A DNA stretch of 64,000 bases, from the IMG/VR virus record IMGVR_UViG_3300009545_000018, positions 372,001 through 436,000 of that record; one strand, written 5' to 3'. The position numbers were made by a program, and so were the translations under genes. A model generated the notes under the pieces. The model made no database searches, was not told the DNA's origin, and saw only the letters and a program-made list of their open reading frames with translations. Shown here piece by piece: positions 45,797 to 64,000 of the stretch (positions are counted from its first letter, which is position 1; each line of letters starts with the position of its first letter).

Positions 45797-46182
45797 AAAA
45801 ATGCTTTTAATTTAAATTTCTTATATTCAATTGAATTTAATAGTTCTTCATTAGATTCAACGAGCACCCTATTTCCATCAATATACCATAATTTATTATA
45901 TGGTTCTATTGTAAATTCCACTGCCGGACCATTCTCATTATGCAGCTTTGTGTCTCTATACCACTCAACGTAATGTGCATATTTTACACAATAATTTCTA
46001 ATTATTTTTTCTTTATAGGGAGGATGATATCTCATCTGACGGCTCCCACAACCTAAACAAATATAATGAAAATTATCATATAGGCAAATACATTTATATT
46101 GTATTTTACAACTATGACATTCAATTATCTTAGGAAAATAATATTCAATTAAATAGGCTTCTTTATTTAAATCTACACTCAT
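45793..46182 (-). CDS. Zn-finger plus HRxDGPA-type protein with the shared tail
   Basis: CHSC...CLGC, LHNENGPAVEF, LWYIDG; ends YKKFKLKAFL. Confidence 0.7.
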   Translation of the reverse strand: MSVDLNKEAYLIEYYFPKIIECHSCKIQYKCICLYDNFHYICLGCGSRQMRYHPPYKEKIIRNYCVKYAHYVEWYRDTKLHNENGPAVEFTIEPYNKLWYIDGNRVLVESNEELLNSIEYKKFKLKAFL

Positions 46183-46658: not shown

Positions 46659-46898
46659 TTAAAATAGTTTCCTAATGAATTTAATTAAATTACTACCTGC
46701 TGAGTAAACAGCTAATTTTAATTCTTTTTTTCCAGCTAATTTGTGTTTAACTCCTACTGGGGAGTGATGTTTATATAATTCAGCTGCTTGCTCTGGTGTT
46801 TCTGCTAAAACTCTATAAGTAACAGTGGCTGGTAGCATACATTCAACTTTTACATCAAAATAGAACTTTTGGGGAGGTTGTAATTTATCTTGTTTCAT
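46659..46898 (-). CDS. Hypothetical protein
   Basis: 79-aa ORF. Confidence 0.6.
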   Translation of the reverse strand: MKQDKLQPPQKFYFDVKVECMLPATVTYRVLAETPEQAAELYKHHSPVGVKHKLAGKKELKLAVYSAGSNLIKFIRKLF

Positions 46899-48460
46899 CT
46901 ATTATTTATATCATTATACTCATACTTTAAATAATGATTATAATAAGTCTCGGGTGTACCCGTTAATTCGTAAAATCTCTTCATAAATAGATCTTTTGCT
47001 TGTTGAGGAGGCAATGGATCTATTATAAATGGGTAGGCTTCTTTTTTTATTTCCCAATCTGAACGAAGAGTTTTAAATAAATCTCTAGCTTCAGTGTATA
47101 ACATTTTTGTATCGGCAAATTTAACGCTTTGTGGTTCATTTTGTGATAAACCAAATTTCTTATAAATAGTTTCTTGTAAAGAGTTTTCATATTCTTTAAA
47201 TATATTAAACTTACCAGATCTTTTTAATGGGCTCGGTAAATCTATTAAATATGCTTCAGAAGCATCATGCAACAAACCGTGTAATGCATGTGCACTATCA
47301 CATAAATGACTGACTAAAACAGAATGTTGAGCTACAGAGTTATGTGCACCGTAACCTTCAGCAAAATATGTTTTAGAGCTTGTTTCTAAAGCTACTACTT
47401 CTTGAACACCAAGATCTTCTATTTTTAGAATCTCGGACATATTAATGCTATCAAATTCTTTACGCCAATCACCATTTTTTAAACTATTTTTAAAGTTATT
47501 TATTAATCTTTTACTTTTAATTTTTCCAAGAGATTGTAATTTAGTAAACCATTTACCAGTTAAAGTAATATTTTTACAATTTTTATTTGTTTTATATTGT
47601 GAATTGGGCACTTTATTATTATCTAATAATTTTTTTATTTTGTTTAAAATTTCTCCCTCATTTTGAGCAATTGAAATAACAAAACCTTTCTTTTTTGCTG
47701 AAATAGTTGCTTCACCATCAAATATTCCTTCTAAATAAGCTAACTCATAATTTAGGGGATCTTCTTTCCACACATCAATAAATTTAAGCATAAATCTTTG
47801 TTTGCCTGACTTTACTGCTTTTACAATTCCTTCGGTTGTTTCCCAAAATTGATTTCTAGATTTTTTAGAACAAATAAGCCAAGGATGTTCAGCAGATGAT
47901 TTTAAAATAGTTCCATCTGATAAATGAAGGGCAAATACATGTCTTTTTATTATGCCTGTATGTAGAACATATGAGTTATCTAATTTTCTACGACTCTCCC
48001 TATTATTTTTTTTTAAACCATCAACTCCAGTATTTTCATCAAATCCAATTAATTGTTCAAAATTTTTAAGTTCGCCCGCCGGCTTCCAAGTTAAATCTGC
48101 CGTTAAAACTTTTGTATCTGGAGTAACACAATAAAATTTTTTAATATGACCAGAAAATCGACATGTCATGGCAAGAGCATGAGCTATATCTTGAATTACA
48201 ATTGTATCAGGATTTGGATTCAAAGGTGTAAATCTTAAACCCGTATAAGTTTGAATCCAAGGCTCAGATGGATCATAGTTGAAAGGATCTTGTTCTTTAT
48301 TTTTTAAATCTGTATTATCATTATAAAACTGTTTAATTACATCTAATTCTTCTGGTTGAACCAACGGAGAATTTAAATCTTGTGATGCTGTTGATTCCCA
48401 TTTTATTTTAACTTCGTCAAATTGGGATGGATTATTAATTATATCTTGTTTATCTTTCAT
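46895..48460 (-). CDS. HD-domain phosphohydrolase (YfbR-like) interrupted by an intein
   Basis: DIAHALA..CRFSGH..FY|intein|SVAQHS...LLHDASEAY..D; start MKDKQ 1 nt after the dut stop. Confidence 0.85.
   Translation of the reverse strand: MKDKQDIINNPSQFDEVKIKWESTASQDLNSPLVQPEELDVIKQFYNDNTDLKNKEQDPFNYDPSEPWIQTYTGLRFTPLNPNPDTIVIQDIAHALAMTCRFSGHIKKFYCVTPDTKVLTADLTWKPAGELKNFEQLIGFDENTGVDGLKKNNRESRRKLDNSYVLHTGIIKRHVFALHLSDGTILKSSAEHPWLICSKKSRNQFWETTEGIVKAVKSGKQRFMLKFIDVWKEDPLNYELAYLEGIFDGEATISAKKKGFVISIAQNEGEILNKIKKLLDNNKVPNSQYKTNKNCKNITLTGKWFTKLQSLGKIKSKRLINNFKNSLKNGDWRKEFDSINMSEILKIEDLGVQEVVALETSSKTYFAEGYGAHNSVAQHSVLVSHLCDSAHALHGLLHDASEAYLIDLPSPLKRSGKFNIFKEYENSLQETIYKKFGLSQNEPQSVKFADTKMLYTEARDLFKTLRSDWEIKKEAYPFIIDPLPPQQAKDLFMKRFYELTGTPETYYNHYLKYEYNDINNR
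47339..48130 (-). mobile_element. Intein (264 aa) with LAGLIDADG-type endonuclease motif
   Basis: Starts CVTPDTKVLTAD, block B SAEHPW, LAYLEGIFDGEA, ends TYFAEGYGAHN, +1 Ser. Confidence 0.9.
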
Positions 48461-48461
48461 T

Positions 48462-48974
48462 TTACTTTCCTGTACTACCAAATCCACTAGCTCCACGACT
48501 AGCATTCCTATTTTTACACAAGACATCATATTCTTCATTTGATATTTCTTCAACAATCATTTCTTTTCTTTTGACAGGAATAATTTGCCCCAAGGCATCC
48601 CCAAAATTAATTTCTAACTTTTTACTATTACTAAATGAAGTTTCATTATTAGTACAAATAATAGCTTCAGGTATATATTGGCAAGCTAATAATAATTCTC
48701 CTTCATAGGTTTCATCGATTGTACCATATAAACAGTGCAATCGTTTTTTACCAAATGTTGAAGATCTTGGCTTTAATTCAAACCACCAACCCTCTGGGCA
48801 AAAAGTTCTAAAACCTAATGGAATAATAGCTTTCTCAAAAGGAGAAAGCGATAAACTTGTGGCTGCTCTTACATCCCATCCTGTGGCATGTGGCTCTGCT
48901 TTTGTTGGTAAAAACTCTTTATTATTTTTTAGATCTTCTCTTAATGCAAACTTAAAATTTGGAATTTCTGACAT
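48462..48974 (-). CDS. dut: Trimeric dUTPase
   Basis: ATGWDV, PRSS, GTIDETYEGE, LGQII, RGASGFGSTG. Confidence 0.92.
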   Translation of the reverse strand: MSEIPNFKFALREDLKNNKEFLPTKAEPHATGWDVRAATSLSLSPFEKAIIPLGFRTFCPEGWWFELKPRSSTFGKKRLHCLYGTIDETYEGELLLACQYIPEAIICTNNETSFSNSKKLEINFGDALGQIIPVKRKEMIVEEISNEEYDVLCKNRNASRGASGFGSTGK

Positions 48975-49034: not shown

Positions 49035-49310
49035 TTACCAAAATGCTTTTAATTCCAAAGGTTTAAACATATTTTGTACAATTATTTGAAAATCATTCAA
49101 AGAATTAACATCTATTAAATATCCTTTATAATAGAATTTAATTTCATCATCTAATTCAATTGCAGGACCATTTATTCTATGTTTTTTGCCTTTTACCCAA
49201 TATTCTTTTCCACCATCTTTATATTCTACTGCTGGACCATCTAAACGATGTAATAAGTCATTCTCATAATAATAATCTCCATATTCATCTGTAACTATTC
49301 CATTTTTCAT
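49035..49310 (-). CDS. HRxDGPA-repeat protein with the shared tail
   Basis: HRLDGPAVE, HRINGPAIE; ends KPLELKAFW. Confidence 0.72.
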   Translation of the reverse strand: MKNGIVTDEYGDYYYENDLLHRLDGPAVEYKDGGKEYWVKGKKHRINGPAIELDDEIKFYYKGYLIDVNSLNDFQIIVQNMFKPLELKAFW

Positions 49311-52868: not shown

Positions 52869-53363
52869 ATGATTACTATTAATGATTTTATAAATAGCCG
52901 AAATCATTGTTTCTGTTGTGGTTCAAATTTAGAAATCTGTATAGAAAGTTTTTCTTTACAAAAAACACCTTCTTTATTATTAAAAAACAATATATTATTA
53001 ATTAATTCATCTTACTTTGATATACATATAGATTTATTAAATAATTATGTAATAAAAGGTTGCGATAAATCACATTGGGAATTTAAACTGGTATTATTTT
53101 GTCCTTTACATAAAGAGTTGCCAAAAGATATATATAAGTATGAACTTATTTTTGATATTTATTGTGGAAAAATAGCCAATGAAACGCCTATAGAATACCT
53201 AATGACTGATAATTTTATTTTACAGTCATTTCCATCTCTAGATGAGATGGAATATGTTAGTTTAAAATCCAACAAAAAAATTACATTTCCTTACTTTGAT
53301 TATAGTCAGATGTCACTACCAAAGTTAAAGAGTAAACTAAAGACATATTTGTTAATGCAATGA
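52869..53363 (+). CDS. Array member: CxxC protein, variant tail
   Basis: CFCCGS; ends LKSKLKTYLLMQ. Confidence 0.7.
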   Translation: MITINDFINSRNHCFCCGSNLEICIESFSLQKTPSLLLKNNILLINSSYFDIHIDLLNNYVIKGCDKSHWEFKLVLFCPLHKELPKDIYKYELIFDIYCGKIANETPIEYLMTDNFILQSFPSLDEMEYVSLKSNKKITFPYFDYSQMSLPKLKSKLKTYLLMQ

Positions 53364-54439
53364 ATACATATCAAAAAATAATGGCTTGTGAAGATAAATT
53401 TCAAGCTATCCAAAAAATTATCTCAATAGATGAATTTACAAGAAGACTTTCAGAAATTGATCATATTTGTAACGATCCTACTACATGGAATGATCATAAA
53501 GCTGCCGCACGTATCATGAAAGAACGGCAAAAAATATCTGATGTAATAAGTAAATATACTTACTTTAAAAATTGGGTTCTCTTTTTTAAAGAGATAGTAA
53601 ATGAACTTCCAGAAGAAATACAATCGTTTAGCCAAGAATCTTCTACTCTGCTATCAGAATTGTCTGCATTTGAGATTAGTCAGATTTTTAAAGAAGAGTC
53701 TGATGATTTGCCTGCTATCCTCTCTATCAATGCCGGGGCTGGTGGTTTAGAGGCAGCAAATTGGGTTACTATGCTCTTACGTATGTATGCTAGATATGCC
53801 AGTAATAATAATTTCAAAGTAGAAATTTTAGACACCAAACCATCTGAAGAGCATAGTTCTATTTGTACTGATTCAGTATCTATTAGAATAGAAGGTACTT
53901 ATGCTTATGGTTTTTTTAAAAGTGAGTCTGGTGTACATAGGTTAATACGTAACTCTCCATTTAGTTCAAATGATACTAGACATACATCCTTTGCTGCCGT
54001 GTCTGTTATGCCAGATATAGAAGACACTATTGATATTAATATTTTAGATAAGGATTTAGAAATAACTGCAATGCGGGCGGGCGGTAGTGGAGGACAACAT
54101 CAAAATAAAACTAATAGTGCCGTTAGATTAAAACACTTGCCAACAGGGATTAATATTGCTGTTAGAGGTGAGAGAGATTATCATCAAAATAAAAGAACAG
54201 CTATGAAGATGTTGAAAGCTAAATTATATGAAATTGAGTTAAAGAAGCAACAAGAAGAAAAGAATAAACATTTAGATGCTATGCAAGATGTAGCTTTTGG
54301 TTCTCAAATAAGAACTTATACTATGAGTCCCACTCAAATAGTAAAAGATCATAGAACAGATTTTGAATGTAATAATACTAATAATGTTTTAGATGGAGAA
54401 ATTGATGATTTTATTAGTGCCTATTTGCATATGATGTAA
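53360..54439 (+). CDS. prfB: Peptide chain release factor 2, single uninterrupted ORF
   Basis: GAGGLEAANW, ESGVHRLIRNSPF (SPF = RF2 specificity), RHTSFA, GGSGGQHQNKT (GGQ), GSQIRTY. Confidence 0.95.
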   Translation: MNTYQKIMACEDKFQAIQKIISIDEFTRRLSEIDHICNDPTTWNDHKAAARIMKERQKISDVISKYTYFKNWVLFFKEIVNELPEEIQSFSQESSTLLSELSAFEISQIFKEESDDLPAILSINAGAGGLEAANWVTMLLRMYARYASNNNFKVEILDTKPSEEHSSICTDSVSIRIEGTYAYGFFKSESGVHRLIRNSPFSSNDTRHTSFAAVSVMPDIEDTIDINILDKDLEITAMRAGGSGGQHQNKTNSAVRLKHLPTGINIAVRGERDYHQNKRTAMKMLKAKLYEIELKKQQEEKNKHLDAMQDVAFGSQIRTYTMSPTQIVKDHRTDFECNNTNNVLDGEIDDFISAYLHMM

Positions 54440-55013: not shown

Positions 55014-55466
55014 AAAAATCTTAAGATTATTAAGCCTTTTACAGTATAGAATGGTTTCTACTAAATCACGTATCTTTAATTGATGTTCATTGTTGTCTTT
55101 AATCCATTTTTGTTTTTTAAATCTGTAATCTGTTTTAATATTTATCTCTTTACCTAATTCAAATAATCTAATTTGAAAATGACTAAACTCTCTAAGTTTT
55201 TTAGGTTTACAATCGTAAGCGTCGTCAAGAACTAATTGTATATTATAATCGCCTACCTTAATAAAGTTATCAAAAATAATCCTTTTATTCTTATTGTAGT
55301 AGGTATATAATATAATGTTGTCTCTTAGAGATTCTTTTATTTTATTTTTAGTAACTTTATTACTAAAATCTAAAATTACGGTTGTTTGTCTAGTTGCTTT
55401 AATTAAACTCATAATGTATGTTTGTAATGCAGGTATATTAATATGTTTGATGTAAATGATCCACAT
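55008..55466 (-). CDS. Inverted unrelated gene inside the array, also with the shared tail
   Basis: No CxxC start; ends CKRLNNLKIFL. Confidence 0.65.
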   Translation of the reverse strand: MWIIYIKHINIPALQTYIMSLIKATRQTTVILDFSNKVTKNKIKESLRDNIILYTYYNKNKRIIFDNFIKVGDYNIQLVLDDAYDCKPKKLREFSHFQIRLFELGKEINIKTDYRFKKQKWIKDNNEHQLKIRDLVETILYCKRLNNLKIFL

Positions 55467-55763
55467 TGCTTAATTTGTAATAGACAATGTCGTGCTTTTA
55501 TAGAAAACTTTTACTCCTGTGATCTTATGCCAGCTCATTATTTTTCAATAATGATCAAAGATAATGTAATTAAACATATTCAAATTAGATTGGAAAATTT
55601 TTGCGCAACTTCCAATTATTCTTTGAATAAAACTTTTATTTGGAAGCATTGTGATAATAATTTAAATTGTTCCAAAATTATTATGTCTCCGGCAATGGAA
55701 TTTGATTTTAATAATTATATTAAGATGTTAAATAAATTGAAAACCATAATTAATTTTAGTTGA
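55443..55763 (+). CDS. Array member
   Basis: CLIC..C....H; ends LNKLKTIINFS. Confidence 0.7.
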   Translation: MFDVNDPHCLICNRQCRAFIENFYSCDLMPAHYFSIMIKDNVIKHIQIRLENFCATSNYSLNKTFIWKHCDNNLNCSKIIMSPAMEFDFNNYIKMLNKLKTIINFS

Positions 55764-56158
55764 TAATGTTACATATAAAAGTGATATTAAAACAAATGCC
55801 AATTAATTGTCCAATATGTAATGGACCCTTAGTCAATAACTTTAAAGAATATCCCAAAGGTAATACATATGCAATGGATAAAAATTGTTTTCAAGCCAGC
55901 CATTACTTTTATTGTGCTTCTACAAAAGGTAAGGAAGATGAAGTTGCTTTTATTTGTATCGGACTTGATCCATATAAAAAAGTAACGGCAAATTGGTTAG
56001 TCTTAGAAAAGAAATTATATATTTATGGTAATGAGTCTACCAATAATCGAAAAAATATCTCAGAAGTAAAAACGACATATATTCCATATGTTGAACCAGA
56101 TTTTTCGGATCCTTTTAAATTAATTGACAAAATAAGATTATATTGTAAATTAATATAA
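55760..56158 (+). CDS. Array member, variant tail
   Basis: NCPIC...C...SH; ends IDKIRLYCKLI. Confidence 0.7.
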   Translation: MIMLHIKVILKQMPINCPICNGPLVNNFKEYPKGNTYAMDKNCFQASHYFYCASTKGKEDEVAFICIGLDPYKKVTANWLVLEKKLYIYGNESTNNRKNISEVKTTYIPYVEPDFSDPFKLIDKIRLYCKLI

Positions 56159-56160
56159 TC

Positions 56161-56544
56161 GTGTTATATGTCCATCATATGGATGATACTTTGCTGTGTC
56201 CTATCTGTGGCAGCAAGATGAGAAACCTTATTATGAATGATAAGTTTTGTTATCAAATTGGTAAAGTTCTCTCTTACATAGAGAGATCTTGTCATAATAA
56301 AGTAAATCATTATGTTCAAATGATTGTAGACAAGAGTTCTAAAAAAGTTTTTTGTGTAAAACTTCCTTTGAATCCACAATATTCTAAAACAATAGAAATA
56401 AATTTCTATAAAAGTGAATGTATTTTAAATCTTCTTAAAGATAAAATAAGTTATACTTTAAATATTCCTAAAATAATTGTGCCTGACTTTCCAAATCTAA
56501 TTAAATTGAAACAACAAGTTAACTTATATTCTCTATTTTCATGA
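56161..56544 (+). CDS. Array member
   Basis: CPICGS...CH...NH; ends LKQQVNLYSLFS. Confidence 0.7.
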   Translation: MLYVHHMDDTLLCPICGSKMRNLIMNDKFCYQIGKVLSYIERSCHNKVNHYVQMIVDKSSKKVFCVKLPLNPQYSKTIEINFYKSECILNLLKDKISYTLNIPKIIVPDFPNLIKLKQQVNLYSLFS

Positions 56545-56561
56545 GGTGATATATATAAAGT

Positions 56562-56942
56562 ATGATAAATTGTCAAGTCTGCGGACAAAATCTAGTGAGA
56601 TCAGGCAATGCAGAAATATATACTTGTATGTCTTCTTTCCATTGGATTGAAACTTATAATAAATATATAGAATATAAACACTTTGCTTGTCATTTTAAAG
56701 ATAGTAAAATATTATATAAGGTTGTAACAATCTATCCATATTGTTTCAAAATGTTTTATGAAGATAATAAAACTAGAATATCTAAATCCATTGTCAGGTC
56801 TGAAATTAAGAAAAATGGTAAAGAGACCGCTTACTCTTCTGAAGAAGTTAATATTTTAGAAATTGATTCTATCATAGAATTTCCTTGGTCTAATAAAGAT
56901 CAAGTGCTTGATAAATTAAAATTATATTCTATCTTTTCATGA
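56562..56942 (+). CDS. Array member
   Basis: CQVCG...C; ends LDKLKLYSIFS. Confidence 0.7.
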   Translation: MINCQVCGQNLVRSGNAEIYTCMSSFHWIETYNKYIEYKHFACHFKDSKILYKVVTIYPYCFKMFYEDNKTRISKSIVRSEIKKNGKETAYSSEEVNILEIDSIIEFPWSNKDQVLDKLKLYSIFS

Positions 56943-57259
56943 ACTATCAATGTCATTATTGTAATAAAAATTTAGAAAGAACCTCAACTGTTACATTGTC
57001 TTGTATTGGAACAGGAAATTACATTATTAAATGTTTAAATTGTTTTAAAACTAAAATAAAATTTAAGGATTATAATATTTTTGATGTAATTCTAGTTGGT
57101 AATAATTATAGTTGTCTAAAATTTTCTAATAGTTTTGATAGTAATAAAAGTTGTATAGAGGTAAATTCTTCCGAACATTTATATTTAAATAAGTGTTTAT
57201 CTTATGAAGATTGTATATTAATCTTTAAAAAATTTAACAAAATATCTGCTTTCTTATGA
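56939..57259 (+). CDS. Array member
   Basis: CHYC...C...CLNC; ends KKFNKISAFL. Confidence 0.7.
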   Translation: MNYQCHYCNKNLERTSTVTLSCIGTGNYIIKCLNCFKTKIKFKDYNIFDVILVGNNYSCLKFSNSFDSNKSCIEVNSSEHLYLNKCLSYEDCILIFKKFNKISAFL

Positions 57260-57558
57260 TTTGTCCTATTTGTAACTATAATTTATCTAAAAGTGACCTT
57301 CATGAAGGCGTCTTTATTTGTCAACAAGAAAAGAAAGTAAAACATATTTTTATGTGTTATTTTTCTTTATCTGAACCAGATATTCTAGAAGATTATTATA
57401 TAGAAGTTTCTTCTCTTAATTTAAATATTGATGGTTACCCCACTGACAATGAAACTCATATAACTTTTAATAAGAATACAATAATTTTCTCATATATAGA
57501 TTATTGTGACGCCTTAGAACTCTTTAATAAAATAAAGAAAATGTATATATTTACTTAA
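57256..57558 (+). CDS. Array member
   Basis: MICPIC...C...KH; ends NKIKKMYIFT. Confidence 0.72.
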   Translation: MICPICNYNLSKSDLHEGVFICQQEKKVKHIFMCYFSLSEPDILEDYYIEVSSLNLNIDGYPTDNETHITFNKNTIIFSYIDYCDALELFNKIKKMYIFT

Positions 57559-57560
57559 TT

Positions 57561-57881
57561 ATGTTATGTCCCATCTGTAATAATCCATGTTCTCCTAAAT
57601 TAACTACTAAAAATAATATTATTGGTGTATCTTGTGAAATAATTACAATTAGTAATTATTATCATATATTTATTTATGCTTCTGAAGACAATTTTATGCT
57701 GGCAATATATTACACTACCCTTGAAGAAGAACAATTTATAATTGTTGGCTGTTACAATGATAGTAATTCTGTAAATTTTATTTTTTCTATAAAAAATAAA
57801 ACCTTTTTAATACCACAATTTAATCCCTGTTCTTCTTTAGAAGTAATAGATAAATATTTAAATATGAAGGCATTTATATAA
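57561..57881 (+). CDS. Array member
   Basis: MLCPIC; ends IDKYLNMKAFI. Confidence 0.72.
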   Translation: MLCPICNNPCSPKLTTKNNIIGVSCEIITISNYYHIFIYASEDNFMLAIYYTTLEEEQFIIVGCYNDSNSVNFIFSIKNKTFLIPQFNPCSSLEVIDKYLNMKAFI

Positions 57882-58150
57882 TGTGTCCTATTTGTTTTGA
57901 ACCTCATCCTTCTCATAAAGTTAGATTTAATCATAGGTTTGTTTATATAAATGACTTTCATTGGTCTCTTTCTATACATTATAAAAATACTACTATAGAA
58001 ATTAGCAGAGAATGTCCTAGTAATGGTTTTAATTATAATTATTATGTTTATTTACAGATCGGCTCAAACGAATACCAATTACCAGAATTTGAATTGTGTA
58101 ATACTTTAGAAGTATTAAATAAATTTATGAAAATTAAATCATTTGCATAA
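57881..58150 (+). CDS. Array member
   Basis: MCPIC; ends LNKFMKIKSFA. Confidence 0.7.
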   Translation: MCPICFEPHPSHKVRFNHRFVYINDFHWSLSIHYKNTTIEISRECPSNGFNYNYYVYLQIGSNEYQLPEFELCNTLEVLNKFMKIKSFA

Positions 58151-58209
58151 TTATTTTTAATTGCTTTATCGATTATCATGATTATAGTAGTGCTGATATA
58201 AAATTTTCA

Positions 58210-58488
58210 ATGCATTGTCCAATTTGTAATAAATTTATAACGCCTGACGCCGATGCCATCAGAGTATGTCGAGGTAATAATCCAGAGGGATTTCATCATT
58301 TTTATTTTGAAAACCCAACTAATTTTAGTTTATTTTTTGAAAATGTAGAACTCCATGCCCTTAATAATAAATATACTTTTATAGTCGAAGAGCCCCGCCA
58401 AATAATAAAAATTAATTTAGATAAAATTGAATATTGTGAAATTATGGAAATTATAGATAGATATATGAAAATGTTGGTTTTTTCATGA
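58210..58488 (+). CDS. Array member
   Basis: MHCPIC...C...HH; ends IDRYMKMLVFS. Confidence 0.72.
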   Translation: MHCPICNKFITPDADAIRVCRGNNPEGFHHFYFENPTNFSLFFENVELHALNNKYTFIVEEPRQIIKINLDKIEYCEIMEIIDRYMKMLVFS

Positions 58489-58766
58489 ATTGTCCCATTT
58501 GTCAGCTATCTATGACACTTATTAAAATAAATAATAAAGATGAAAGATTTCGCTGTGAATCAAATAAGCAACATTATTGTGTTTATTATTTAAATGGACT
58601 TACTTGGTGGGTGCAACATAATAACATGGAAATTGAATATGATCATCTATTTGGTTGTAGTTTAATTGTAAATGATGAATCAGGTATAGAACACTATTAC
58701 AGAATAGATTATAATGTGTCTTTTCAAGATGCACCAAAACTTTTAAAATTGAAAGCTTTTTTATGA
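58485..58766 (+). CDS. Array member
   Basis: MNCPIC...C...QH; ends APKLLKLKAFL. Confidence 0.72.
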   Translation: MNCPICQLSMTLIKINNKDERFRCESNKQHYCVYYLNGLTWWVQHNNMEIEYDHLFGCSLIVNDESGIEHYYRIDYNVSFQDAPKLLKLKAFL

Positions 58767-59071
58767 ATTGTCCAGTTTGTAATCAACCTATGATTTATGT
58801 AAAAGAAGATGAAGGTGGTCCGCAAACCTTTAATAGAAATAAATGTAACTATCGTCCTGACCATGATACTAGGCATTATGATGATGGTGCCTGGTTTACA
58901 AAATTAAATAATATTCAAATAGGACATAATCTAGATGATCCTAATCTTTCCAACTTCTATGTAAGAATAATTGGCGAACATGAAACCTCCTTTTTAAATA
59001 TTGATGCAATATCTTTTGAAGATAGTTATAATTATCTTATTAAATTTTCGAAATTGAAAGCCTTTCTATGA
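58763..59071 (+). CDS. Array member
   Basis: MNCPVC...C...DH; ends LIKFSKLKAFL. Confidence 0.72.
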   Translation: MNCPVCNQPMIYVKEDEGGPQTFNRNKCNYRPDHDTRHYDDGAWFTKLNNIQIGHNLDDPNLSNFYVRIIGEHETSFLNIDAISFEDSYNYLIKFSKLKAFL

Positions 59072-59352
59072 ATTGCCCCATCTGTAACCATCAAATGGAA
59101 GAAAGATATAAATATTTAGCTCCCACAGGAATTTTCTTTAGATGTATCCAATTCTCACAACAGCATGATACCGTTTTTATTAACGAAAAAGAATGGACCG
59201 TTAGATATAACAGTATCATTTTGTTTACAATAAATAGTTTGTTTTATTTAAAATTTTCCACCAATAGTCAAAGCATTAATATTCCCAATATTCCTTTTAA
59301 TGAATCTTTTAAATGTATACAAAAATATCTTAAATTACAAAGCTTTACATGA
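59068..59352 (+). CDS. Array member
   Basis: MNCPIC...C...QH; ends IQKYLKLQSFT. Confidence 0.72.
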   Translation: MNCPICNHQMEERYKYLAPTGIFFRCIQFSQQHDTVFINEKEWTVRYNSIILFTINSLFYLKFSTNSQSINIPNIPFNESFKCIQKYLKLQSFT

Positions 59353-59405
59353 TCTGCCCCTTTAATATTCTGCAACGTTATATTAATTTATCAGCTTTCT
59401 TATGA
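59349..59405 (+). CDS. 18-aa tail-only mini-ORF MICPFNILQRYINLSAFL
   Basis: Family start (MICP) fused in frame to the tail; ATGA overlaps on both sides. Confidence 0.6.
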   Translation: MICPFNILQRYINLSAFL

Positions 59406-59772
59406 TTATTCTTTATACTTTTCTCTTGTCTTTAATATTAGCAGCTTGGCTTACAGCTACCCCCAAATTACAGCTAATCCCAACTAAACATCTTCTTATA
59501 TGTCCATTTTGTCTAAAACAATTGGATAAGTATGCTGTTATGTTTAGAGACTGTAATAATTTCCCTCCCCTGGAAAAATTAATCATGCTTTCTCTATGTT
59601 TGCAGAAAATTTCTATCTGATTGTTTATGCTGATGTTACTATTAAATTAGAAAAATATTATAATTCATATTTTATCACAATCAATGATAAAATATTTACA
59701 ATCCCTCCCTTCCAAGTGTGTAATAGTTTAGAGGTAATGCATAAATATTTAAAATTATTGCCCTTTTCTTAA
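59402..59772 (+). pseudogene. Frameshifted array member
   Basis: ICPFC...C in one frame; from the C-rich run near 59561-59570 the -1 frame continues NHAF...MHKYLKLLPFS stop. Confidence 0.6.
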
Positions 59773-59816
59773 CAACATACAATATCTCGATCGCAACTTC
59801 CCTCGCGCATAAAATT

Positions 59817-60071
59817 ATGAAATGTCCCCTCTGTTATGATAGCTGTCAAACTCTCTATTCTAATGAATTTAGATGTACTAAGTTTGATCATAGTTTCGTT
59901 TTTTCTCATCATGATTGGGCTCTCTATCATATACCATCGGATATAATTACTACAACTTATGGGCTATCGTATTATACCAGTAATAATATTATCTCCTTTG
60001 AAACGCTAAAATCCCCTGATGCTGCTATTAAAATTTTGTTAAAATTCTTAAAAATATCCGCCTTTGCCTAA
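59817..60071 (+). CDS. Array member
   Basis: MKCPLC...C..FDH; ends LLKFLKISAFA. Confidence 0.72.
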   Translation: MKCPLCYDSCQTLYSNEFRCTKFDHSFVFSHHDWALYHIPSDIITTTYGLSYYTSNNIISFETLKSPDAAIKILLKFLKISAFA

Positions 60072-60072
60072 A

Positions 60073-60218
60073 ATGAATTGTCCCATTTGTCAAGCTAAAC
60101 TTATAAAATATCTAAGAATCCATTAGAAGAATTGTCTTGCTATAAAATGAAAATTATCCCGTTTTCAGAGTGTTATCAAACGTTACAACGCTATATCAAG
60201 ATGTCTGCCTTCCTATGA
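60073..60218 (+). pseudogene. Frameshifted and shortened array member
   Basis: MNCPICQAKLIK, then the -1 frame at an A-run gives ISKNPLEE...LQRYIKMSAFL stop; internal 23-aa ORF 60147-60218. Confidence 0.6.
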
Positions 60219-60514
60219 AAATTTGTCCCGTTTGTCATCAGCCACTAATAAAAGAAAAATTAGGTAGTCCCATATTTACTTCTTATTATTGTACCGAATT
60301 TGGTCATGTTGCTTCTTGGTCTTCTTCTAACAGTTGGTCATTATACTGCTATGTTAATGATTATTTATATGCTATTATCGGCTCGGAAGATAAATGTAGT
60401 TTTATCACCTTTACTGATAATACAACAAAAGTAACAACAACGAATATTTATACTTCTTTTGAAGAGTCTTATCTGTCTATCCAACGAATGGTTAAATTAT
60501 TAACTTTTATTTAA
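60215..60514 (+). CDS. Array member
   Basis: MKICPVC start via ATGA overlap; ends IQRMVKLLTFI. Confidence 0.72.
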   Translation: MKICPVCHQPLIKEKLGSPIFTSYYCTEFGHVASWSSSNSWSLYCYVNDYLYAIIGSEDKCSFITFTDNTTKVTTTNIYTSFEESYLSIQRMVKLLTFI

Positions 60515-60515
60515 A

Positions 60516-60821
60516 ATGAATTGCCCCCACTGTAATATAATGTGTTCTAAATCTGATCATACTTATGATTGTTTTAAAGATTTTAAACATACTTTTATCT
60601 TTTCTAACAAAAACTCTTGGTGGCTTATTATTAAATATGATAGTCTAATAGAATATCGTTTGGAAATTCATAATTCTCTTCCTACTTTTTATGTCTTTGC
60701 TAATCCTCCCTTTTCTATAGTCTTTGAATATGTAATACATGAACCCGTAATAGCAGCAAATGCTAAATCTATAATAGAAAAATATATTAATCATTATAAT
60801 AAAATGAAAGCCTTTATATGA
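60516..60821 (+). CDS. Array member
   Basis: MNCPHC...C...KH; ends HYNKMKAFI. Confidence 0.72.
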   Translation: MNCPHCNIMCSKSDHTYDCFKDFKHTFIFSNKNSWWLIIKYDSLIEYRLEIHNSLPTFYVFANPPFSIVFEYVIHEPVIAANAKSIIEKYINHYNKMKAFI

Positions 60822-61054
60822 AAGAATTACCTGTTAAAAATGATAGTTATTTCTATAATGATAATAATTGGTCTGTTTATTATGTTTTCTGTAATAAATA
60901 TAAGGTAAGAATTTGCTGCATCTTAGAAAAATGTTATGTCCATATGTTGAATGAACAATACGTAACGGTAAAATGTATGCCAATTAATTCTTTAAAGTTT
61001 GATGATGCAGATTCTTTTGTTAATAGATATTTTAATTTAATGGCTTTTTATTAA
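60818..61054 (+). CDS. Last array member (N-terminal CxxC missing)
   Basis: ends VNRYFNLMAFY. Confidence 0.65.
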   Translation: MKELPVKNDSYFYNDNNWSVYYVFCNKYKVRICCILEKCYVHMLNEQYVTVKCMPINSLKFDDADSFVNRYFNLMAFY

Positions 61055-61361
61055 AATATAATGTCATAGGATGCTGTCAAAGGGAGCAAAGTGTTAGAAA
61101 GTGGGAGGGTGTGGGAAGATAGCTGAATTAATGTCTTTTAATGTTTTGGCTGTCATTTGGGGTGGAATAGGATAGAAAGAGAAGATAAGTTATACTTTGA
61201 TTTAGAAGGTTTAAGGAGGAAAGTAAGATTTTGGATTGGTTTGAACTGTATTATAGAGCTTATAGATGGTTTGATGTGTTTAAAATAGCTGTAGACCGGG
61301 TCCCCAGCCGCCTCGGACCGTCAAACTCCCCACCTTTTCACTGCTGCTACAATACAGGGTT

Positions 61362-61396
61362 TGGCATACTCTCTGCATTATTCAATTAACATACCA
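61362..61396. promoter_or_regulatory. Head-to-head sigma54-type element pair 1 (right half degenerate)
   Basis: TGGCATACTCTCTGCA ... reverse TGGTATGTTAATTGA. Confidence 0.55.
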
Positions 61397-61470
61397 ATTA
61401 TTCTTTTATAAGTCTTATTAATTAATTATACTTACATTACAATCATTTAATAAACATTATTAATCATTTA

Positions 61471-61504
61471 TGGCATCTTTCTTGCTTTCGCTGTTATTTT
61501 GCCT
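61471..61504. promoter_or_regulatory. Head-to-head sigma54-type pair 2
   Basis: TGGCATCTTTCTTGCT; reverse AGGCAAAATAACAGC; 4-nt centre. Confidence 0.55.
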
Positions 61505-61537
61505 CACTGAACAGCTTTTCAGCCCTTTTAGTAGTCT

Positions 61538-61572
61538 TGGTACAGTAACTGCAAGATGCAAAGCCTATACCA
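61538..61572. promoter_or_regulatory. Head-to-head sigma54-type pair 3
   Basis: GG-N10-GC-N5-GC-N10-CC; reverse TGGTATAGGCTTTGCA. Confidence 0.65.
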
Positions 61573-61667
61573 TGCCATAGCAGTCATTCCAGTTACACTG
61601 CACTTACCCATCTTTTAACGGTTAGTACCTGATTAATGTAGCGGGTAGCTGAGATAAGGAGATTACT

Positions 61668-61859
61668 ATGGCACAATTCAAGATTTTGTCTCAAGTCAAT
61701 GGTTCTTGGTTGGAGCAGGGGAAAGATCTCGGCGGTACTACTGTTATGAATCAAGCTGCTCAATTGGAAAAGCAGGGATTGAATGTTCGAGTTTTCCGAA
61801 CTGATATTCCCAAGTTCATTTATGAAACGGGAGCAGGATACCACGGAATCTGGTACTGA
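61668..61859 (+). CDS. Small hypothetical (putative early) protein
   Basis: AAGGAG RBS; followed by a terminator. Confidence 0.7.
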   Translation: MAQFKILSQVNGSWLEQGKDLGGTTVMNQAAQLEKQGLNVRVFRTDIPKFIYETGAGYHGIWY

Positions 61860-61865
61860 AAGAAT

Positions 61866-61893
61866 AAAGGAGCCTAAGGCTCCTTTTCTTTTT
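61866..61893 (+). terminator. Intrinsic terminator
   Basis: AAAGGAGCC-taa-GGCTCCTTT plus T-run. Confidence 0.8.
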
Positions 61894-61900
61894 ATCTTTG

Positions 61901-61935
61901 TGGTATAGGATTTGCTTATTGCAATTAATATACCA
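61901..61935. promoter_or_regulatory. Head-to-head sigma54-type pair 4
   Basis: TGGTATAGGATTTGCT-TAT-TGCAATTAATATACCA. Confidence 0.72.
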
Positions 61936-62007
61936 AGACTTTTTAGATAAAAGAGCTCTACCCATCCTATAACGGAATCAAAGCAGCTATTGTAAGGTAG
62001 GTATCAT

Positions 62008-62379
62008 ATGGAATTCACCTATGAGAATGATGAAGGGGAAGACATTACAGTCACCTTCCCTAGTGTTAAGGTAGTTTGCCCAAGGTGTAAAGGGCACGGA
62101 ACCCACCTTCACAATGATATTGGTAGCTATGCTTACAGCGTAGAAGAATTCCAAGATTCCTTTGATGAAGAAGAACAGGCAGAGTATTTTCGCCATGGTG
62201 GAAGATATGACGTTCTCTGCGAACGCTGTCACGGTAAAAACGTGGTGGATGAGATTGACGAAGAGAAGTGTCAGCAGGATCCGGCTTTGACAGAAGCCTG
62301 GCAAGCTTTTTGTCAGAAAGAAAAGGATGATGCTGATTATGAAAGACTCTGTGAATCAGAGCGGCGCTTTGGTTGCTGA
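62008..62379 (+). CDS. Hypothetical protein with DnaJ-type CxxCxGxG Zn motifs
   Basis: CPRCKGHG, CERCHGKN. Confidence 0.72.
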   Translation: MEFTYENDEGEDITVTFPSVKVVCPRCKGHGTHLHNDIGSYAYSVEEFQDSFDEEEQAEYFRHGGRYDVLCERCHGKNVVDEIDEEKCQQDPALTEAWQAFCQKEKDDADYERLCESERRFGC

Positions 62380-62416
62380 TTGAGATCCCATCCTATAACG
62401 GATTACTGCTAATAGT

Positions 62417-62629
62417 ATGACAACCCTGCAGAATCTCAAGAAGCGTGACTTGTCTTTTGCTTACCAGATTGCAGTGGCAGACTGGAAAAAACTTTCTGCT
62501 ATGTGTTCTGGGCAGTCAGCTGACGATCTGGCTAATGGCTTTCATGGTAAGTCATTGGCTGGAGTGCTGTTTGATTCGGAATTGGCAGTGGATCAGATTG
62601 CAGCTAAGCTGGATCGGTTGAATCCTTAA
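62417..62629 (+). CDS. Small hypothetical protein
   Basis: ATG 14 nt after a box. Confidence 0.65.
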   Translation: MTTLQNLKKRDLSFAYQIAVADWKKLSAMCSGQSADDLANGFHGKSLAGVLFDSELAVDQIAAKLDRLNP

Positions 62630-62635
62630 GGGATT

Positions 62636-62665
62636 GAAAGGGAGGTTTACCTCCCTTTCTTTTTA
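62636..62665 (+). terminator. Intrinsic terminator
   Basis: GAAAGGGAGG-ttta-CCTCCCTTTC plus T-run. Confidence 0.85.
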
Positions 62666-62673
62666 ATTGATGC

Positions 62674-62708
62674 TGGTATGCCGTTTGCATATTGCAATGT
62701 TCGAGCCA
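62674..62708. promoter_or_regulatory. Head-to-head sigma54-type pair 5
   Basis: TGGTATGCCGTTTGCA-TAT-TGCAATGTTCGAGCCA. Confidence 0.72.
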
Positions 62709-62871
62709 ACCGTCATAAAGTTTGCTTTAAACTTGTTCCCATCTGATAACGGATAGATCCTAATAGTATAGTTTTTCTGAGGGTTCTGACTAAAAGTAAA
62801 ACCCTCCCCCTTTACGTTGCAAACAGTAACTGTAGTAGGCAATAAGCTTCCAGTTATATTGTAACAAAGTT

Positions 62872-62902
62872 TGGCGGTATCTTAAAACCGCCACATTTTT
62901 TA
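62872..62902 (+). terminator. Intrinsic terminator
   Basis: TGGCGGT-atcttaaa-ACCGCCA plus T-run. Confidence 0.7.
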
Positions 62903-62934
62903 ATCCCATCATTTAACGGAAAGGTCTAAGTAAT

Positions 62935-63129
62935 ATGAATACTCTTTTTAAGTTGGTTGTTGTGATGTTGGCATTGTTTGCCGTGACTTTCTTGATTCAA
63001 ACCTATGCCAATTCTTGGTTTCATCAAGTGGCATTCACGGCTCCTATCATTGGAACCATGAGCTATGCAGCTTGTACCATTGTGGCAGTAGGTTGTGTGT
63101 TGCTGTCAAAGCTGCATTGGGGCAAGTAA
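62935..63129 (+). CDS. Small membrane protein (2 TM)
   Basis: Hydrophobic; ATG 14 nt after a box. Confidence 0.65.
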   Translation: MNTLFKLVVVMLALFAVTFLIQTYANSWFHQVAFTAPIIGTMSYAACTIVAVGCVLLSKLHWGK

Positions 63130-63227
63130 TGTTAGGTTTCGTGGTGTTTTGCCTGGTAGGTTTTTTTACTGGGCATTGGGTAGTGGGTGGTATTATTGGA
63201 ATTGTAGTATACGCCCTAAATAAGTAA
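63129..63227 (+). CDS. 32-aa hydrophobic peptide
   Basis: TAATG overlap; MLGFVVFCLVGFFTGHWVVGGIIGIVVYALNK. Confidence 0.55.
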   Translation: MLGFVVFCLVGFFTGHWVVGGIIGIVVYALNK

Positions 63228-63259
63228 CTCCCATCAATAAACGGTTGAATGTTATTGAT

Positions 63260-63436
63260 ATGACATATCATCCCAGTTACCGAGCAGTAGATTCTGTTGG
63301 TACTGAATGTGAAACTTTTGAACATGAGTATCAAGCGGTAGACTATTGGACTGGTGCTCCTACTGGAATTGATATTCAATATTGGAATGGTTCTGAATGG
63401 GAAGAATATAATCCTAGGACTTTCACTAAAGATTAA
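63260..63436 (+). CDS. Small acidic hypothetical protein
   Basis: ATG 14 nt after a box; stop 2 nt before the next box. Confidence 0.65.
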   Translation: MTYHPSYRAVDSVGTECETFEHEYQAVDYWTGAPTGIDIQYWNGSEWEEYNPRTFTKD

Positions 63437-63472
63437 TTCCCATCAATTAACGGATTGTACCTAGTTATTGAG

Positions 63473-63652
63473 ATGCAAAACCTAAAAGACCGATTGGAAA
63501 AGTTAGCAGATTCTTTTAAGGGTACTACCAATTCTTTTGGTAGGTTTACCGTCACCAATGTAGGTTGCGGGATTCTGAGAGTTGATGGTGAAGGTGTGCA
63601 GTATACTCCCGATGTAATATTGGGTTTTCTCAATCGACACGGCATTAAGTAA
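63473..63652 (+). CDS. Small hypothetical protein
   Basis: MQNLKDRLEKLAD...; stop 2 nt before the next box. Confidence 0.62.
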   Translation: MQNLKDRLEKLADSFKGTTNSFGRFTVTNVGCGILRVDGEGVQYTPDVILGFLNRHGIK

Positions 63653-63697
63653 TTCCCATCAATAAACGGATTAGATCTATTAGAAAGGATAAAAAAG

Positions 63698-63802
63698 ATG
63701 AAAGCATTCAATTGTTATATTGTCAAGCGCAAGGGCAAAGTCATCAAGGGTGAGAGTCGCAAGCTGCGCAATGCAGCCAAGCGACAACGTCAAGGTCGCT
63801 AA
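63698..63802 (+). CDS. 34-aa basic peptide resembling ribosomal protein bL36
   Basis: MKAFNCYIVKRKGKVIKGESRKLRNAAKRQRQGR; AAAGGA RBS; terminator follows. Confidence 0.55.
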   Translation: MKAFNCYIVKRKGKVIKGESRKLRNAAKRQRQGR

Positions 63803-63805
63803 ACC

Positions 63806-63841
63806 AAAAGAATGAGAGCTTAATTGTTCTCATTCTTTTTT
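63806..63841 (+). terminator. Intrinsic, possibly bidirectional terminator
   Basis: AAAAGAATGAGAGC-ttaatt-GTTCTCATTCTTTT. Confidence 0.85.
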
Positions 63842-63850
63842 AATTGGTCT

Positions 63851-63885
63851 TGGCATATGCTTTGCAACTTGCAATAAGCTTGCCA
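63851..63885. promoter_or_regulatory. Head-to-head sigma54-type pair 6
   Basis: TGGCATATGCTTTGCA-ACT-TGCAATAAGCTTGCCA. Confidence 0.78.
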
Positions 63886-63944
63886 GGCGTTATATTTTTA
63901 TATCCCATCTATTAACGGAAAGACATACTAAGTGGAGGCTGGTA

Positions 63945-64000
63945 ATGTTCATTAAGATTAAAGCTTTGTTCAAGCTGTATGATCTGGGAATCATTAGCAG
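63945..64000 (+). CDS. Start of a gene truncated by the window edge
   Basis: GGAGG RBS; MFIKIKALFKLYDLGIIS... Confidence 0.5.
   Translation, partial: MFIKIKALFKLYDLGIIS

What the first reader, a model, noticed from the sequence alone, without database searches (positions are those of the whole stretch)
59349..60218. Tail-only mini-ORFs and frameshifted members show the tail survives when the body is lost
Seen: 59349-59405 encodes MICPFNILQRYINLSAFL, the family start fused in frame to the tail, with ATGA overlaps on both sides. 60147-60218 (MKIIPFSECYQTLQRYIKMSAFL) and 59596-59772 (...HKYLKLLPFS) are in-frame tail-bearing halves of frameshifted genes, broken at an A-run and a C-rich run. Inference: either decay snapshots that keep translational coupling intact, or free tail peptides acting as competitors. 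They delimit a minimal tag of about 14 aa. Assembly error at homopolymers is possible for the two frameshifts but not for the in-frame deletion.
Basis: partly seen in the sequence, partly recalled or inferred. Interest (0 to 1): 0.6.

Follow-up and report, generated by a model that had tools for sequence, protein, structure and literature searches.

The report
Decayed gene copies in phage array
Three broken or shrunken copies of a small zinc-ribbon gene sit inside a tandem array of about 20 such genes in a 448-kb uncultured phage; they are real in the DNA and look like ordinary gene decay, not a purpose-built set of free tail peptides.

Summary
Window 59349-59405 encodes MICPFNILQRYINLSAFL, with ATGA overlaps on both sides. 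59402-59772 is one gene split by a single frameshift. 60073-60218 is a 48-codon remnant with an internal deletion and a frameshift. All three align to the surrounding family: an MxCPxC zinc ribbon, a beta sheet and a C-terminal helix ending K-L-K-A-F-x. A second assembly and a Logan contig at depth 21 carry the same sequence without a gap, so assembly error is unlikely.

Relatives show the same kinds of wreckage. One has an intact 125-aa orthologue of the frameshifted gene, and a start+tail remnant with a stop codon before the tail. A 394-kb relative has two frameshifted members, an 8-aa tail-only ORF and an N-terminal-only remnant. I found no slippery heptamer and no downstream RNA structure.

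Best reading: turnover of paralogues in a polycistronic array. The "competitor peptide" half has no support. The tag is about 9-11 residues, not 14.

The more interesting feature is the tail itself. It sits on about 110 proteins, is conserved at peptide level, and occurs in a phage clade that encodes its own ClpP pair.

The parts
59068..59352 (+). Intact family member (94 aa, MNCPICN...KYLKLQSFT). Its TGA overlaps the mini-ORF's ATG.
   Evidence: It is an ORFan by word search but a member of the profile family.
59349..59405 (+). Mini-ORF of 18 codons, MICPFNILQRYINLSAFL. The family start (MICPF) is joined in frame to a complete tail. ATGA overlaps on both sides.
   Evidence: Tail score 18.5. 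Identical in the second assembly.
59402..59620 (+). 5' part of the frameshifted gene 'A': a hydrophobic N-terminal extension (MIILYTFLLSLILAAW...), the CPFC knuckle and DCN, then out-of-frame residues up to the TGA.
   Evidence: 42% identity to residues 1-53 of the intact 125-aa orthologue L004:287-664.
59557..59580 (+). Stretch in which gene A's reading frame breaks. The downstream frame is -1 relative to the upstream frame. It contains a C-rich run and an A5 run.
   Evidence: Three-frame reading. No X_XXY_YYZ heptamer seen. The downstream RNA fold is no better than shuffles (z +1.13).
59560..59772 (+). 3' part of gene A in the second frame, open stop to stop with its first ATG at 59596. It carries the beta-sheet body and the tail ...HKYLKLLPFS.
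   Evidence: 46% identity to residues 61-125 of L004:287-664. Tail score 16.3.
59817..60071 (+). Intact family member (84 aa, ...KFLKISAFA) lying between the two broken genes.
   Evidence: P0010.
60073..60126 (+). 5' piece of remnant 'B': MNCPICQAKLIKYLRIH, ending at a TAG.
60100..60123 (+). Stretch in which remnant B's frame breaks (downstream frame -1). It contains a short A4 run.
   Evidence: The downstream RNA fold has z +0.12.
60147..60218 (+). 3' piece of remnant B: MKIIPFSECYQTLQRYIKMSAFL (frame open from 60099). Its TGA overlaps the ATG of the next intact member at 60215.
   Evidence: Tail score 19.6. The whole remnant is about 48 codons, so an internal deletion occurred as well.
60215..60514 (+). 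Intact downstream member (99 aa, MKICPVCH...MVKLLTFI).
   Evidence: P0007.
55443..61054 (+). The enclosing tandem array: about 16 intact members and 3 decayed ones. Members are mostly joined by ATGA or 1-nt junctions. There is no terminator-like site, and promoter-like sites occur at chance level.
   Evidence: The array is syntenic, downstream of a release-factor gene, in relatives.

Best explanation
The three features are decayed copies (pseudogene remnants) of a lineage-expanded family of about 90-125-aa proteins, lying in a tightly packed, probably polycistronic array of a 448-kb uncultured jumbo phage. Family members have an N-terminal CPxC...C...H zinc ribbon, a small beta sheet and a C-terminal helix ending in [KR]-hydrophobic-x-[KN]-[LMI]-[KL]-[AVS]-F-hydrophobic.

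- The mini-ORF is what an in-frame internal deletion left of one member: its first 5-6 codons and its last 12-13.
- Gene A (59402-59772) is a full-length member with one recent frameshift.
- Remnant B (60073-60218) lost its middle and also carries a frameshift.

Shown: the homology, the breaks, their presence in independent assemblies, and the same kinds of wreckage in relatives.

Inferred: the tails still look perfect because the lesions are young. Gene A's second frame has 70 codons without a stop in DNA of about 28% GC. In addition, each gene's ends are shared with its neighbours' stop and start codons, so only lesions that spare the ends leave the neighbours untouched. Ribosomes may well still run through the mini-ORF as a passive relay in the ATGA chain, but I see no evidence that the peptide itself has a function.
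For: - Alignment of the three pieces (X at each break) with 12 intact neighbours places start, zinc ligands, body and tail in register.
- The profile of the family finds 81 proteins, 67 of them from other metagenomes, all with the same start and tail.
- Gene A's two halves match an intact 125-aa orthologue at 42% and 46% identity, E 5e-18.
- The sequence is identical in IMGVR_UViG_3300025914_000017 (0 gaps, 2 SNPs elsewhere) and in a Logan contig at depth 21.
- Relatives carry independent wreckage. L004 has a start+tail remnant, MICPYCQSKNRNDDP*LKAFI*, with ATGA overlaps on both sides. G001 has two frameshifted members, one at a C7 run and one at an (ATGAAAT)x3 repeat, an 8-aa tail-only ORF MIKLQIFL*, and a 37-aa N-terminal-only remnant beside an insertion.
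- A 6.4-kb array contig of another relative has 21 members and no gaps, so remnants are not a fixed feature of the array.
- The mini-ORF's tail and remnant B's tail share LQRYIxxSAFL but differ at 6 synonymous sites in 9 shared codons. Both were therefore long-lived coding genes before they decayed, not recent copies of each other.
- All other high-scoring short tails in the genome are alternate-frame chance hits inside genes, or one truncated MORN-type copy.
Against: - The mini-ORF's tail is as good as that of intact genes (score 18.5), and both of its ATGA junctions are intact. This is also what selection for a translated relay or peptide would give.
- Three decayed copies within 870 bp is a tight cluster.
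- Start+tail or tail-only remnants abutting the next gene's ATG recur in three phages, which hints at some constraint on that DNA.
- No RNA or ribosome data exist for this phage, so translation of the pieces is untested.
- No relative of intermediate distance was found, so the age of the lesions is only inferred.
Confidence: 0.75

Rival explanations
1. The mini-ORF is a remnant, but it is kept by selection as a cis-acting relay. It lets ribosomes that finish gene 59068-59352 restart and terminate exactly on the ATG of gene A. More generally, the last codons of each tail double as the initiation region of the next gene. On this reading the DNA matters and the peptide does not.
For: - ATGA overlaps on both sides.
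- An unbroken run of -4 overlaps from 58485 to 59402.
- Tail-bearing genes overlap the next start by ATGA twice as often as other genes, 25% against 12%.
- Remnants in L004 and G001 also end on the next gene's ATG, and in L004 the tail DNA persists behind a stop codon.
- No Shine-Dalgarno motif lies ahead of array genes.
Against: - Array genes that follow spacers (58210, 59817) also lack a Shine-Dalgarno motif, so coupling is not obligatory.
- ATGA junctions are the norm in these arrays, so remnants showing them is no enrichment.
- Half of all tail genes are not adjacent to a downstream start.
- The gene served by the relay, gene A, is itself broken.
Confidence: 0.12
2. The short ORFs are functional free tail peptides that compete with, or titrate, whatever recognises the shared C-terminal tail.
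For: - The complete 9-11-residue motif is present in both short ORFs.
- The tail is under peptide-level selection genome-wide.
- The phage encodes a ClpP pair that could belong to a tail-reading proteolytic system.
Against: - No conserved orthologue was found.
- The L004 remnant has a stop before its tail, and the G001 remnant is 8 aa with a weak motif, score 6.1.
- One or two peptides against about 110 tail-bearing proteins gives little leverage.
- The 23-aa ORF at 60147 has no coupled start and sits behind a premature stop.
- The tail receptor is unknown.
Confidence: 0.05
3. The two frameshifts are bypassed on purpose, by programmed -1 ribosomal frameshifting or by phase variation through slipped-strand changes, so that full-length or truncated products are regulated.
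For: - Both breaks need a -1 shift.
- The windows hold short A runs.
- In G001 the breaks sit at a C7 run and at a 7-nt x3 repeat, which are typical slippage sites.
Against: - No X_XXY_YYZ heptamer in either window.
- No downstream structure: z +1.13 and +0.12.
- The orthologue of gene A in a relative is one unbroken ORF.
- The runs here are only 4-5 nt long.
- One G001 break needs the opposite shift.
- The contigs show no length variants, although contigs hide rare ones.
Confidence: 0.05
4. The frameshifts are sequencing or assembly errors, and the genes are intact in the real phage.
For: Both breaks lie near short homopolymers. Only contig-level data were available, not raw reads.
Against: - Two assemblies that differ by 2 SNPs elsewhere agree base for base with no gap.
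- A Logan contig at word depth 21 agrees.
- Runs of 4-5 nt are not error-prone in short-read data.
- Long genes elsewhere in the genome are unbroken.
- Remnant B is also missing about 150 nt, which no homopolymer slip explains.
Confidence: 0.03

Closest known systems
Birth-and-death turnover of lineage-expanded paralogue arrays in large viruses; for jumbo phages, the roughly 35-copy zinc-ribbon expansion of Bacillus phage G described in PMC7824862
   Same: A jumbo phage of about 30% GC with some 35 small zinc-ribbon paralogues, many in tandem. Copies are gained, lost, truncated and frameshifted between relatives.
   Different: No sequence similarity to any cultured phage, phage G included (tblastn gave no match at E 1). 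This family carries a C-terminal tail that it shares with unrelated proteins. Pseudogene remnants in the phage G expansion are not described in the passage I read.
Translationally coupled genes with ATGA stop/start overlaps (termination-reinitiation)
   Same: The mini-ORF is linked to both neighbours by ATGA, and array genes lack Shine-Dalgarno motifs.
   Different: Coupling has not been shown here. Members that follow spacers start without it.
Programmed -1 ribosomal frameshift sites (dnaX-type, phage tail chaperone G/GT-type); compared from general knowledge
   Same: Two overlapping ORFs related by a -1 shift.
   Different: No slippery heptamer, no stimulatory structure, and the orthologue is unbroken.
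C-terminal degradation tags read by Clp unfoldases (ssrA LAA-type and MuA RRKKAI-type ClpX motifs); compared from general knowledge, and only for the tail
   Same: A short motif at the very C-terminus, with basic residues followed by small and hydrophobic residues, on many unrelated proteins. The phage encodes two ClpP paralogues.
   Different: The invariant penultimate Phe is not part of known ClpX motifs. No phage ClpX or ClpA was found. No binding or degradation was tested.

Membership tests
Pseudogene remnant of the local zinc-ribbon + tail family | Detectable homology to intact paralogues or orthologues across the pieces | tested here: met
   Alignment with X at each break. Gene A halves match the intact orthologue at 42% and 46% identity, E 5e-18.
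Pseudogene remnant of the local zinc-ribbon + tail family | Reading frame broken, or body missing, relative to intact members | tested here: met
   Three-frame reading. Lengths are 18 and about 48 codons, against 84-126 for intact members.
Pseudogene remnant of the local zinc-ribbon + tail family | The lesion is real in the DNA and not an assembly artefact | tested here: met
   Second assembly and Logan contig are identical with 0 gaps. Raw reads were not available.
Pseudogene remnant of the local zinc-ribbon + tail family | The lesion is not conserved in relatives | tested here: met
   The gene A orthologue is intact in L004. Another relative's 21-gene array has no gaps. Remnants in relatives sit at other positions. 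Only distant relatives were available.
Programmed -1 ribosomal frameshift | Slippery heptamer X_XXY_YYZ in the shift window | tested here: not met
   None in 59557-59580 or in 60100-60123; only A5 and A4 runs.
Programmed -1 ribosomal frameshift | Stimulatory RNA structure downstream | tested here: not met
   Fold z-scores +1.13 and +0.12 against shuffles.
Programmed -1 ribosomal frameshift | The frameshift is conserved in orthologues | tested here: not met
   L004:287-664 is a single ORF.
Functional micro-peptide or decoy | The peptide is conserved at an orthologous position in relatives | tested here: inconclusive
   Analogous but non-orthologous remnants were found, one with a stop before its tail. 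No close relatives exist in the databases searched.
Functional micro-peptide or decoy | The peptide is expressed and binds a receptor | not testable with these tools
   No RNA run holds this sequence. The receptor is unknown.
Clp-type C-terminal degron (for the tail only) | Motif at the extreme C-terminus, conserved as peptide on unrelated proteins | tested here: met
   About 110 ORF ends against 0-4 in shuffles. Third codon positions are free. The motif sits on both zinc-ribbon and non-zinc-ribbon proteins.
Clp-type C-terminal degron (for the tail only) | A cognate unfoldase/protease recognises the tail | not testable with these tools
   A ClpP pair is present. No ClpX-like gene was found; there is only a generic AAA protein.

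The most novel reading that the evidence does not exclude
The 18-aa ORF is a translated, selected element: a free copy of the shared C-terminal tail. It would act as a relay that hands ribosomes on through the ATGA chain, or as a decoy for the still unknown reader of the tail. If so, tail-only remnants in three related phages would be recurrent recruits rather than debris.
Probability: 0.07. Interest if true: 0.6.

Novelty: new member of a known kind. Interest (0 to 1): 0.3.

Why it matters
On their own these pieces are ordinary: gene decay in a fast-turning paralogue array. They are still useful in three ways.

1. They show that the array evolves by birth and death. About 1 in 7-10 copies is visibly broken in each of two genomes.
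2. Together with the genome-wide profile, they bound the shared C-terminal motif at about 9-11 residues.

The open question worth pursuing is the tail itself. More than 100 unrelated small proteins in a clade of uncultured 400-450-kb phages end in K-L-K-A-F-x, and it is not known why.

Tried and rejected
- Pfam and PHROGs scans of ten tail-bearing proteins gave only sub-threshold noise.
- megablast and tblastn against cultured phages found nothing for the array, a family member, the MORN-type protein or the tubulin.
- Word-based protein searches with the 59068 protein and with gene A's 5' part found only themselves.
- The metagenome scan with P0013 confirmed no relative.
- The two JGI contigs of the nearest relative could be seen only as gene tables, without DNA. 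A 68-nt gap there could therefore not be inspected.
- The Foldseek PDB search with the confident model (pLDDT 91.9) gave no match at E <= 0.001.
- Only Logan contigs, not raw reads, were available, and there was no RNA run. Minor variants and expression are therefore untested.
- I first read 'LICPFC' in gene A as a lost start codon. I dropped this once the orthologue showed that the upstream extension is conserved.
- I considered that the tail is a DNA or RNA signal such as a promoter, ribosome-binding site or terminator. I rejected this because conservation follows codon periodicity with free third positions, and promoter and terminator scans are at chance level.
- I considered a microhomology (CCNTTT) origin for the in-frame deletion. 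It cannot be decided from one sequence.
- A literature search for a phage ClpP/degron link found nothing.

Full report
**Setting**

The window is bases 372001-436000 of a 447,763-bp IMG/VR virus record with about 30% GC. It encodes a DnaB-type helicase, a sigma factor, ribonucleotide reductase, thymidylate synthase, collagen-like fibre proteins, a TubZ-like tubulin and a class-I release factor. It is therefore a jumbo phage. The only public run that holds the sequence is a rhizosphere metagenome. No cultured phage is similar.

**The array and the family**

From about 55443 to 61054 on the + strand lies a tandem array of genes of about 84-132 codons. Most are joined by ATGA or 1-nt junctions. 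The region has no terminator-like site, and promoter-like sites occur at chance level (62 found, 52 +/- 7 expected).

- Members begin M-x-C-P-x-C, have a further Cys and His, and end in a shared tail.
- A profile of 11 members finds 81 proteins among 1.84 billion representatives. Fourteen are from this genome and 67 from other metagenomes, all with the same start and end.
- An AlphaFold2 model of the 58763 member (74-sequence alignment, pLDDT 91.9, pTM 0.81) shows a zinc-ribbon-like N-terminus, seven strands and a C-terminal helix at residues 85-99. The last three residues (A-F-L) lie outside the helix.
- No solved structure matches at E <= 0.001, and Pfam and PHROGs are silent.

**The tail**

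A position matrix from the last ten residues scores 114 ORF ends at 10 or more in this genome, against 1-4 in block shuffles. Of 747 selected ORFs, 146 have Phe as the penultimate residue.

- Conservation is at peptide level. Ala is encoded by GCA 26, GCT 21, GCC 11 and GCG 4. Leu at position -5 uses five codons. Information content shows a three-base periodicity.
- Information is confined to positions -9 to -1, plus a weak hydrophobic position at -11. This holds both for the zinc-ribbon family and for 71 other proteins.
- The motif is [KR]-hydrophobic-x-[KN]-[LMI]-[KL]-[AVS]-F-hydrophobic, about 9-11 residues rather than 14.
- The 394-kb relative G001 (IMGVR_UViG_3300047994_000374, release factor 48% identical) has 60 such ends, against 0-1 in shuffles.

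**The three features**

1. *Mini-ORF, 59349-59405.* It encodes MICPFNILQRYINLSAFL. Its ATG overlaps the TGA of 59068-59352, and its TGA overlaps the ATG at 59402. It aligns to the family start and the family tail with nothing in between.
2. *Gene A, 59402-59772.*
   - The first frame gives 72 residues: a hydrophobic extension, the CPFC knuckle and DCN, then out-of-frame residues.
   - The second frame is open from 59560 (first ATG at 59596) and gives the body and the tail HKYLKLLPFS.
   - The two halves match residues 1-53 and 61-125 of an unbroken 125-aa protein in a relative (L004:287-664) at 42% and 46% identity, including the N-terminal MILLYTF extension.
   - The gene therefore starts at 59402, and its single break lies in 59557-59580.
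3. *Remnant B, 60073-60218.*
   - It reads MNCPICQAKLIKYLRIH-stop, followed in the -1 frame by ...MKIIPFSECYQTLQRYIKMSAFL.
   - The frame break lies in 60100-60123.
   - The whole remnant is 146 nt, so about half of a normal member is missing as well.
   - Its TGA overlaps the ATG of the intact member at 60215.

**Are the lesions real?**

L003 and L006 come from IMGVR_UViG_3300025914_000017, a 48.6-kb contig. They match the genome over 20.3 kb with two SNPs (window 55089 and 63076) and no gap. A 48,630-bp Logan contig of the rhizosphere run, at word depth 21, covers 58700-60900 with no difference. That run may be the source of the 48.6-kb contig, so I count two assemblies, not three.

Raw reads were not available, so rare variants cannot be excluded. 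Runs of 4-5 bases are not error-prone in short-read data (general knowledge).

**Are the frameshifts programmed?**

- Neither window holds an X_XXY_YYZ heptamer.
- The 80 nt downstream fold no better than shuffles, with z +1.13 and +0.12.
- The orthologue is unbroken.

Programmed frameshifting is therefore not supported.

**What relatives show**

- *L004* (Logan contig; the gene order is repeated in a JGI contig). A 58-nt gap after P0013 reads MICPYCQSKNRNDDP-stop-LKAFI-stop. Both of its ends are linked to the neighbours by ATGA. This is a start+tail remnant whose tail lies behind a stop codon.
- *G001.* Its array of about 30 members (minus strand, 92-104 kb) holds several kinds of wreckage:
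  - two frameshifted members, broken at a C7 run and at an (ATGAAAT)x3 repeat, each with a tail-bearing second piece;
  - an 8-codon tail-only ORF, MIKLQIFL, that ends on the next gene's ATG;
  - a 37-aa N-terminal-only remnant next to an opposite-strand insertion.
- *A third relative.* Its 6.4-kb contig has 21 members with no gap.

Wreckage of every kind therefore recurs at different positions, at roughly one in seven to ten copies per genome. Both gene ends can survive, not only the tail.

**Age and history**

The tails of the mini-ORF and of remnant B share LQRYIxxSAFL. They differ at six synonymous sites among nine shared codons (read). No DNA-level duplicate of any piece exists in the genome. 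Both were therefore long-standing coding genes, not recent copies of each other.

Gene A's second frame runs for 70 codons without a stop in DNA of about 28% GC, which argues that its break is young (inference).

The other high-scoring short tails in the genome are alternate-frame chance hits inside larger genes, plus one truncated MORN-type copy at G000:47228-47329.

**Cis constraint**

Tail-bearing genes overlap the next start by ATGA in 25% of cases, against 12% for other genes. Half are not adjacent to a start at all. Array genes lack Shine-Dalgarno motifs whether or not they are overlapped.

Sharing of stop and start codons with neighbours can explain why lesions that spare the gene ends are the ones seen. 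A requirement for the mini-ORF as a relay is not shown.

**Verdict**

The 'decay snapshot' reading is supported. The 'competitor peptide' reading has no support. The minimal tag is about 9-11 residues.

The finding is a new example of a known kind of thing: pseudogene remnants in a viral paralogue array. The nearest literature parallel is the roughly 35-copy zinc-ribbon expansion of Bacillus phage G (PMC7824862), to which no sequence similarity was detected.

All translations used table 11. Broken genes were read with X at the break.

Noticed in passing
Whole genome G000 (for example window 6043-6357, 9416-9682, 17984-18235, 36282-36569 minus strand, 45793-46182 minus strand) and relative G001: About 110 of about 750 ORFs end in [KR]-hydrophobic-x-[KN]-[LMI]-[KL]-[AVS]-F-hydrophobic. 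These are mostly small proteins (median 92 aa) of unrelated N-terminal folds. The motif is conserved as peptide, with free third codon positions. There are 60 such ends in the 394-kb relative, and the motif is on 67 metagenomic homologues. Its reader and function are unknown. This is the most interesting feature of the genome.
   Followed up: partly
G000:C1:221835-222374 and 222448-222978 (outside the window; loci L028, L029); G001:327785-328946: Two tandem ClpP paralogues (Pfam CLP_protease, E 2e-45 and 1e-49), preceded by a DksA-like zinc-finger ORF. By eye the first copy lacks the catalytic Ser and His (ClpR-like). The pair is conserved at 55% identity in the other tail-rich phage. No S41 peptidase and no clear ClpX were found. 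A link to the C-terminal tail is speculation.
   Followed up: partly
window 53360-54439 (+): Phage-encoded class-I release factor (PCRF + RF-1 domains) with an SPF motif, i.e. RF2 type. It lies directly upstream of the array, and the same gene order is seen in two relatives. It may bear on TGA use in the host. TGA ends 73 of 289 long ORFs here.
   Followed up: partly
window 59402-59494 (+); L004:287-380: Gene A's subfamily carries a roughly 30-residue hydrophobic N-terminal extension (MIILYTFLLSLILAAW... / MILLYTFIAIIAFISWW...). It looks like a membrane anchor or signal peptide placed ahead of the zinc ribbon.
   Followed up: no
window about 61100-64000, and the first roughly 20 kb of G000: GC rises from about 28% to about 40% at the end of the array and stays high to the end of the record. 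The junction is also present in the independent 48.6-kb contig. The genes there look different in kind, for example a CxxC-rich 123-aa protein at 62008-62379. This could be a foreign module or the other arm of a permuted genome.
   Followed up: no
window 1868-3226 (+): TubZ-like tubulin (Pfam Tubulin 5e-15, TubZ-like_C 3e-9). No similar gene in cultured phages by tblastn.
   Followed up: partly
window 46895-48556 (-): A 553-aa ORF with a LAGLIDADG-like domain in its middle (Pfam 2e-7). This suggests an intein or homing-endonuclease insertion in an HD-type protein.
   Followed up: no
G001:96150-96300 and 97840-98010 (minus strand): The relative's two frameshifted array members break at an (ATGAAAT)x3 tandem repeat and at a C7 run. 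Both are classic slipped-strand sites. This could be true phase variation or, for the C7 run, an assembly slip.
   Followed up: no
G001:99605-100451 (minus-strand view): A 37-aa N-terminal-only family remnant is followed by about 800 bp that carry an ORF on the opposite strand. This looks like an insertion that cut an array member.
   Followed up: no
G000:C1:47228-47329; window 36282-36569 (-), 49035-49310 (-), 9416-9682 (+): A second expanded family has MORN-like GPA repeats and ends in ...SSQEEFEKLLKLKAFW. One truncated copy retains only the last repeats and the tail.
   Followed up: no
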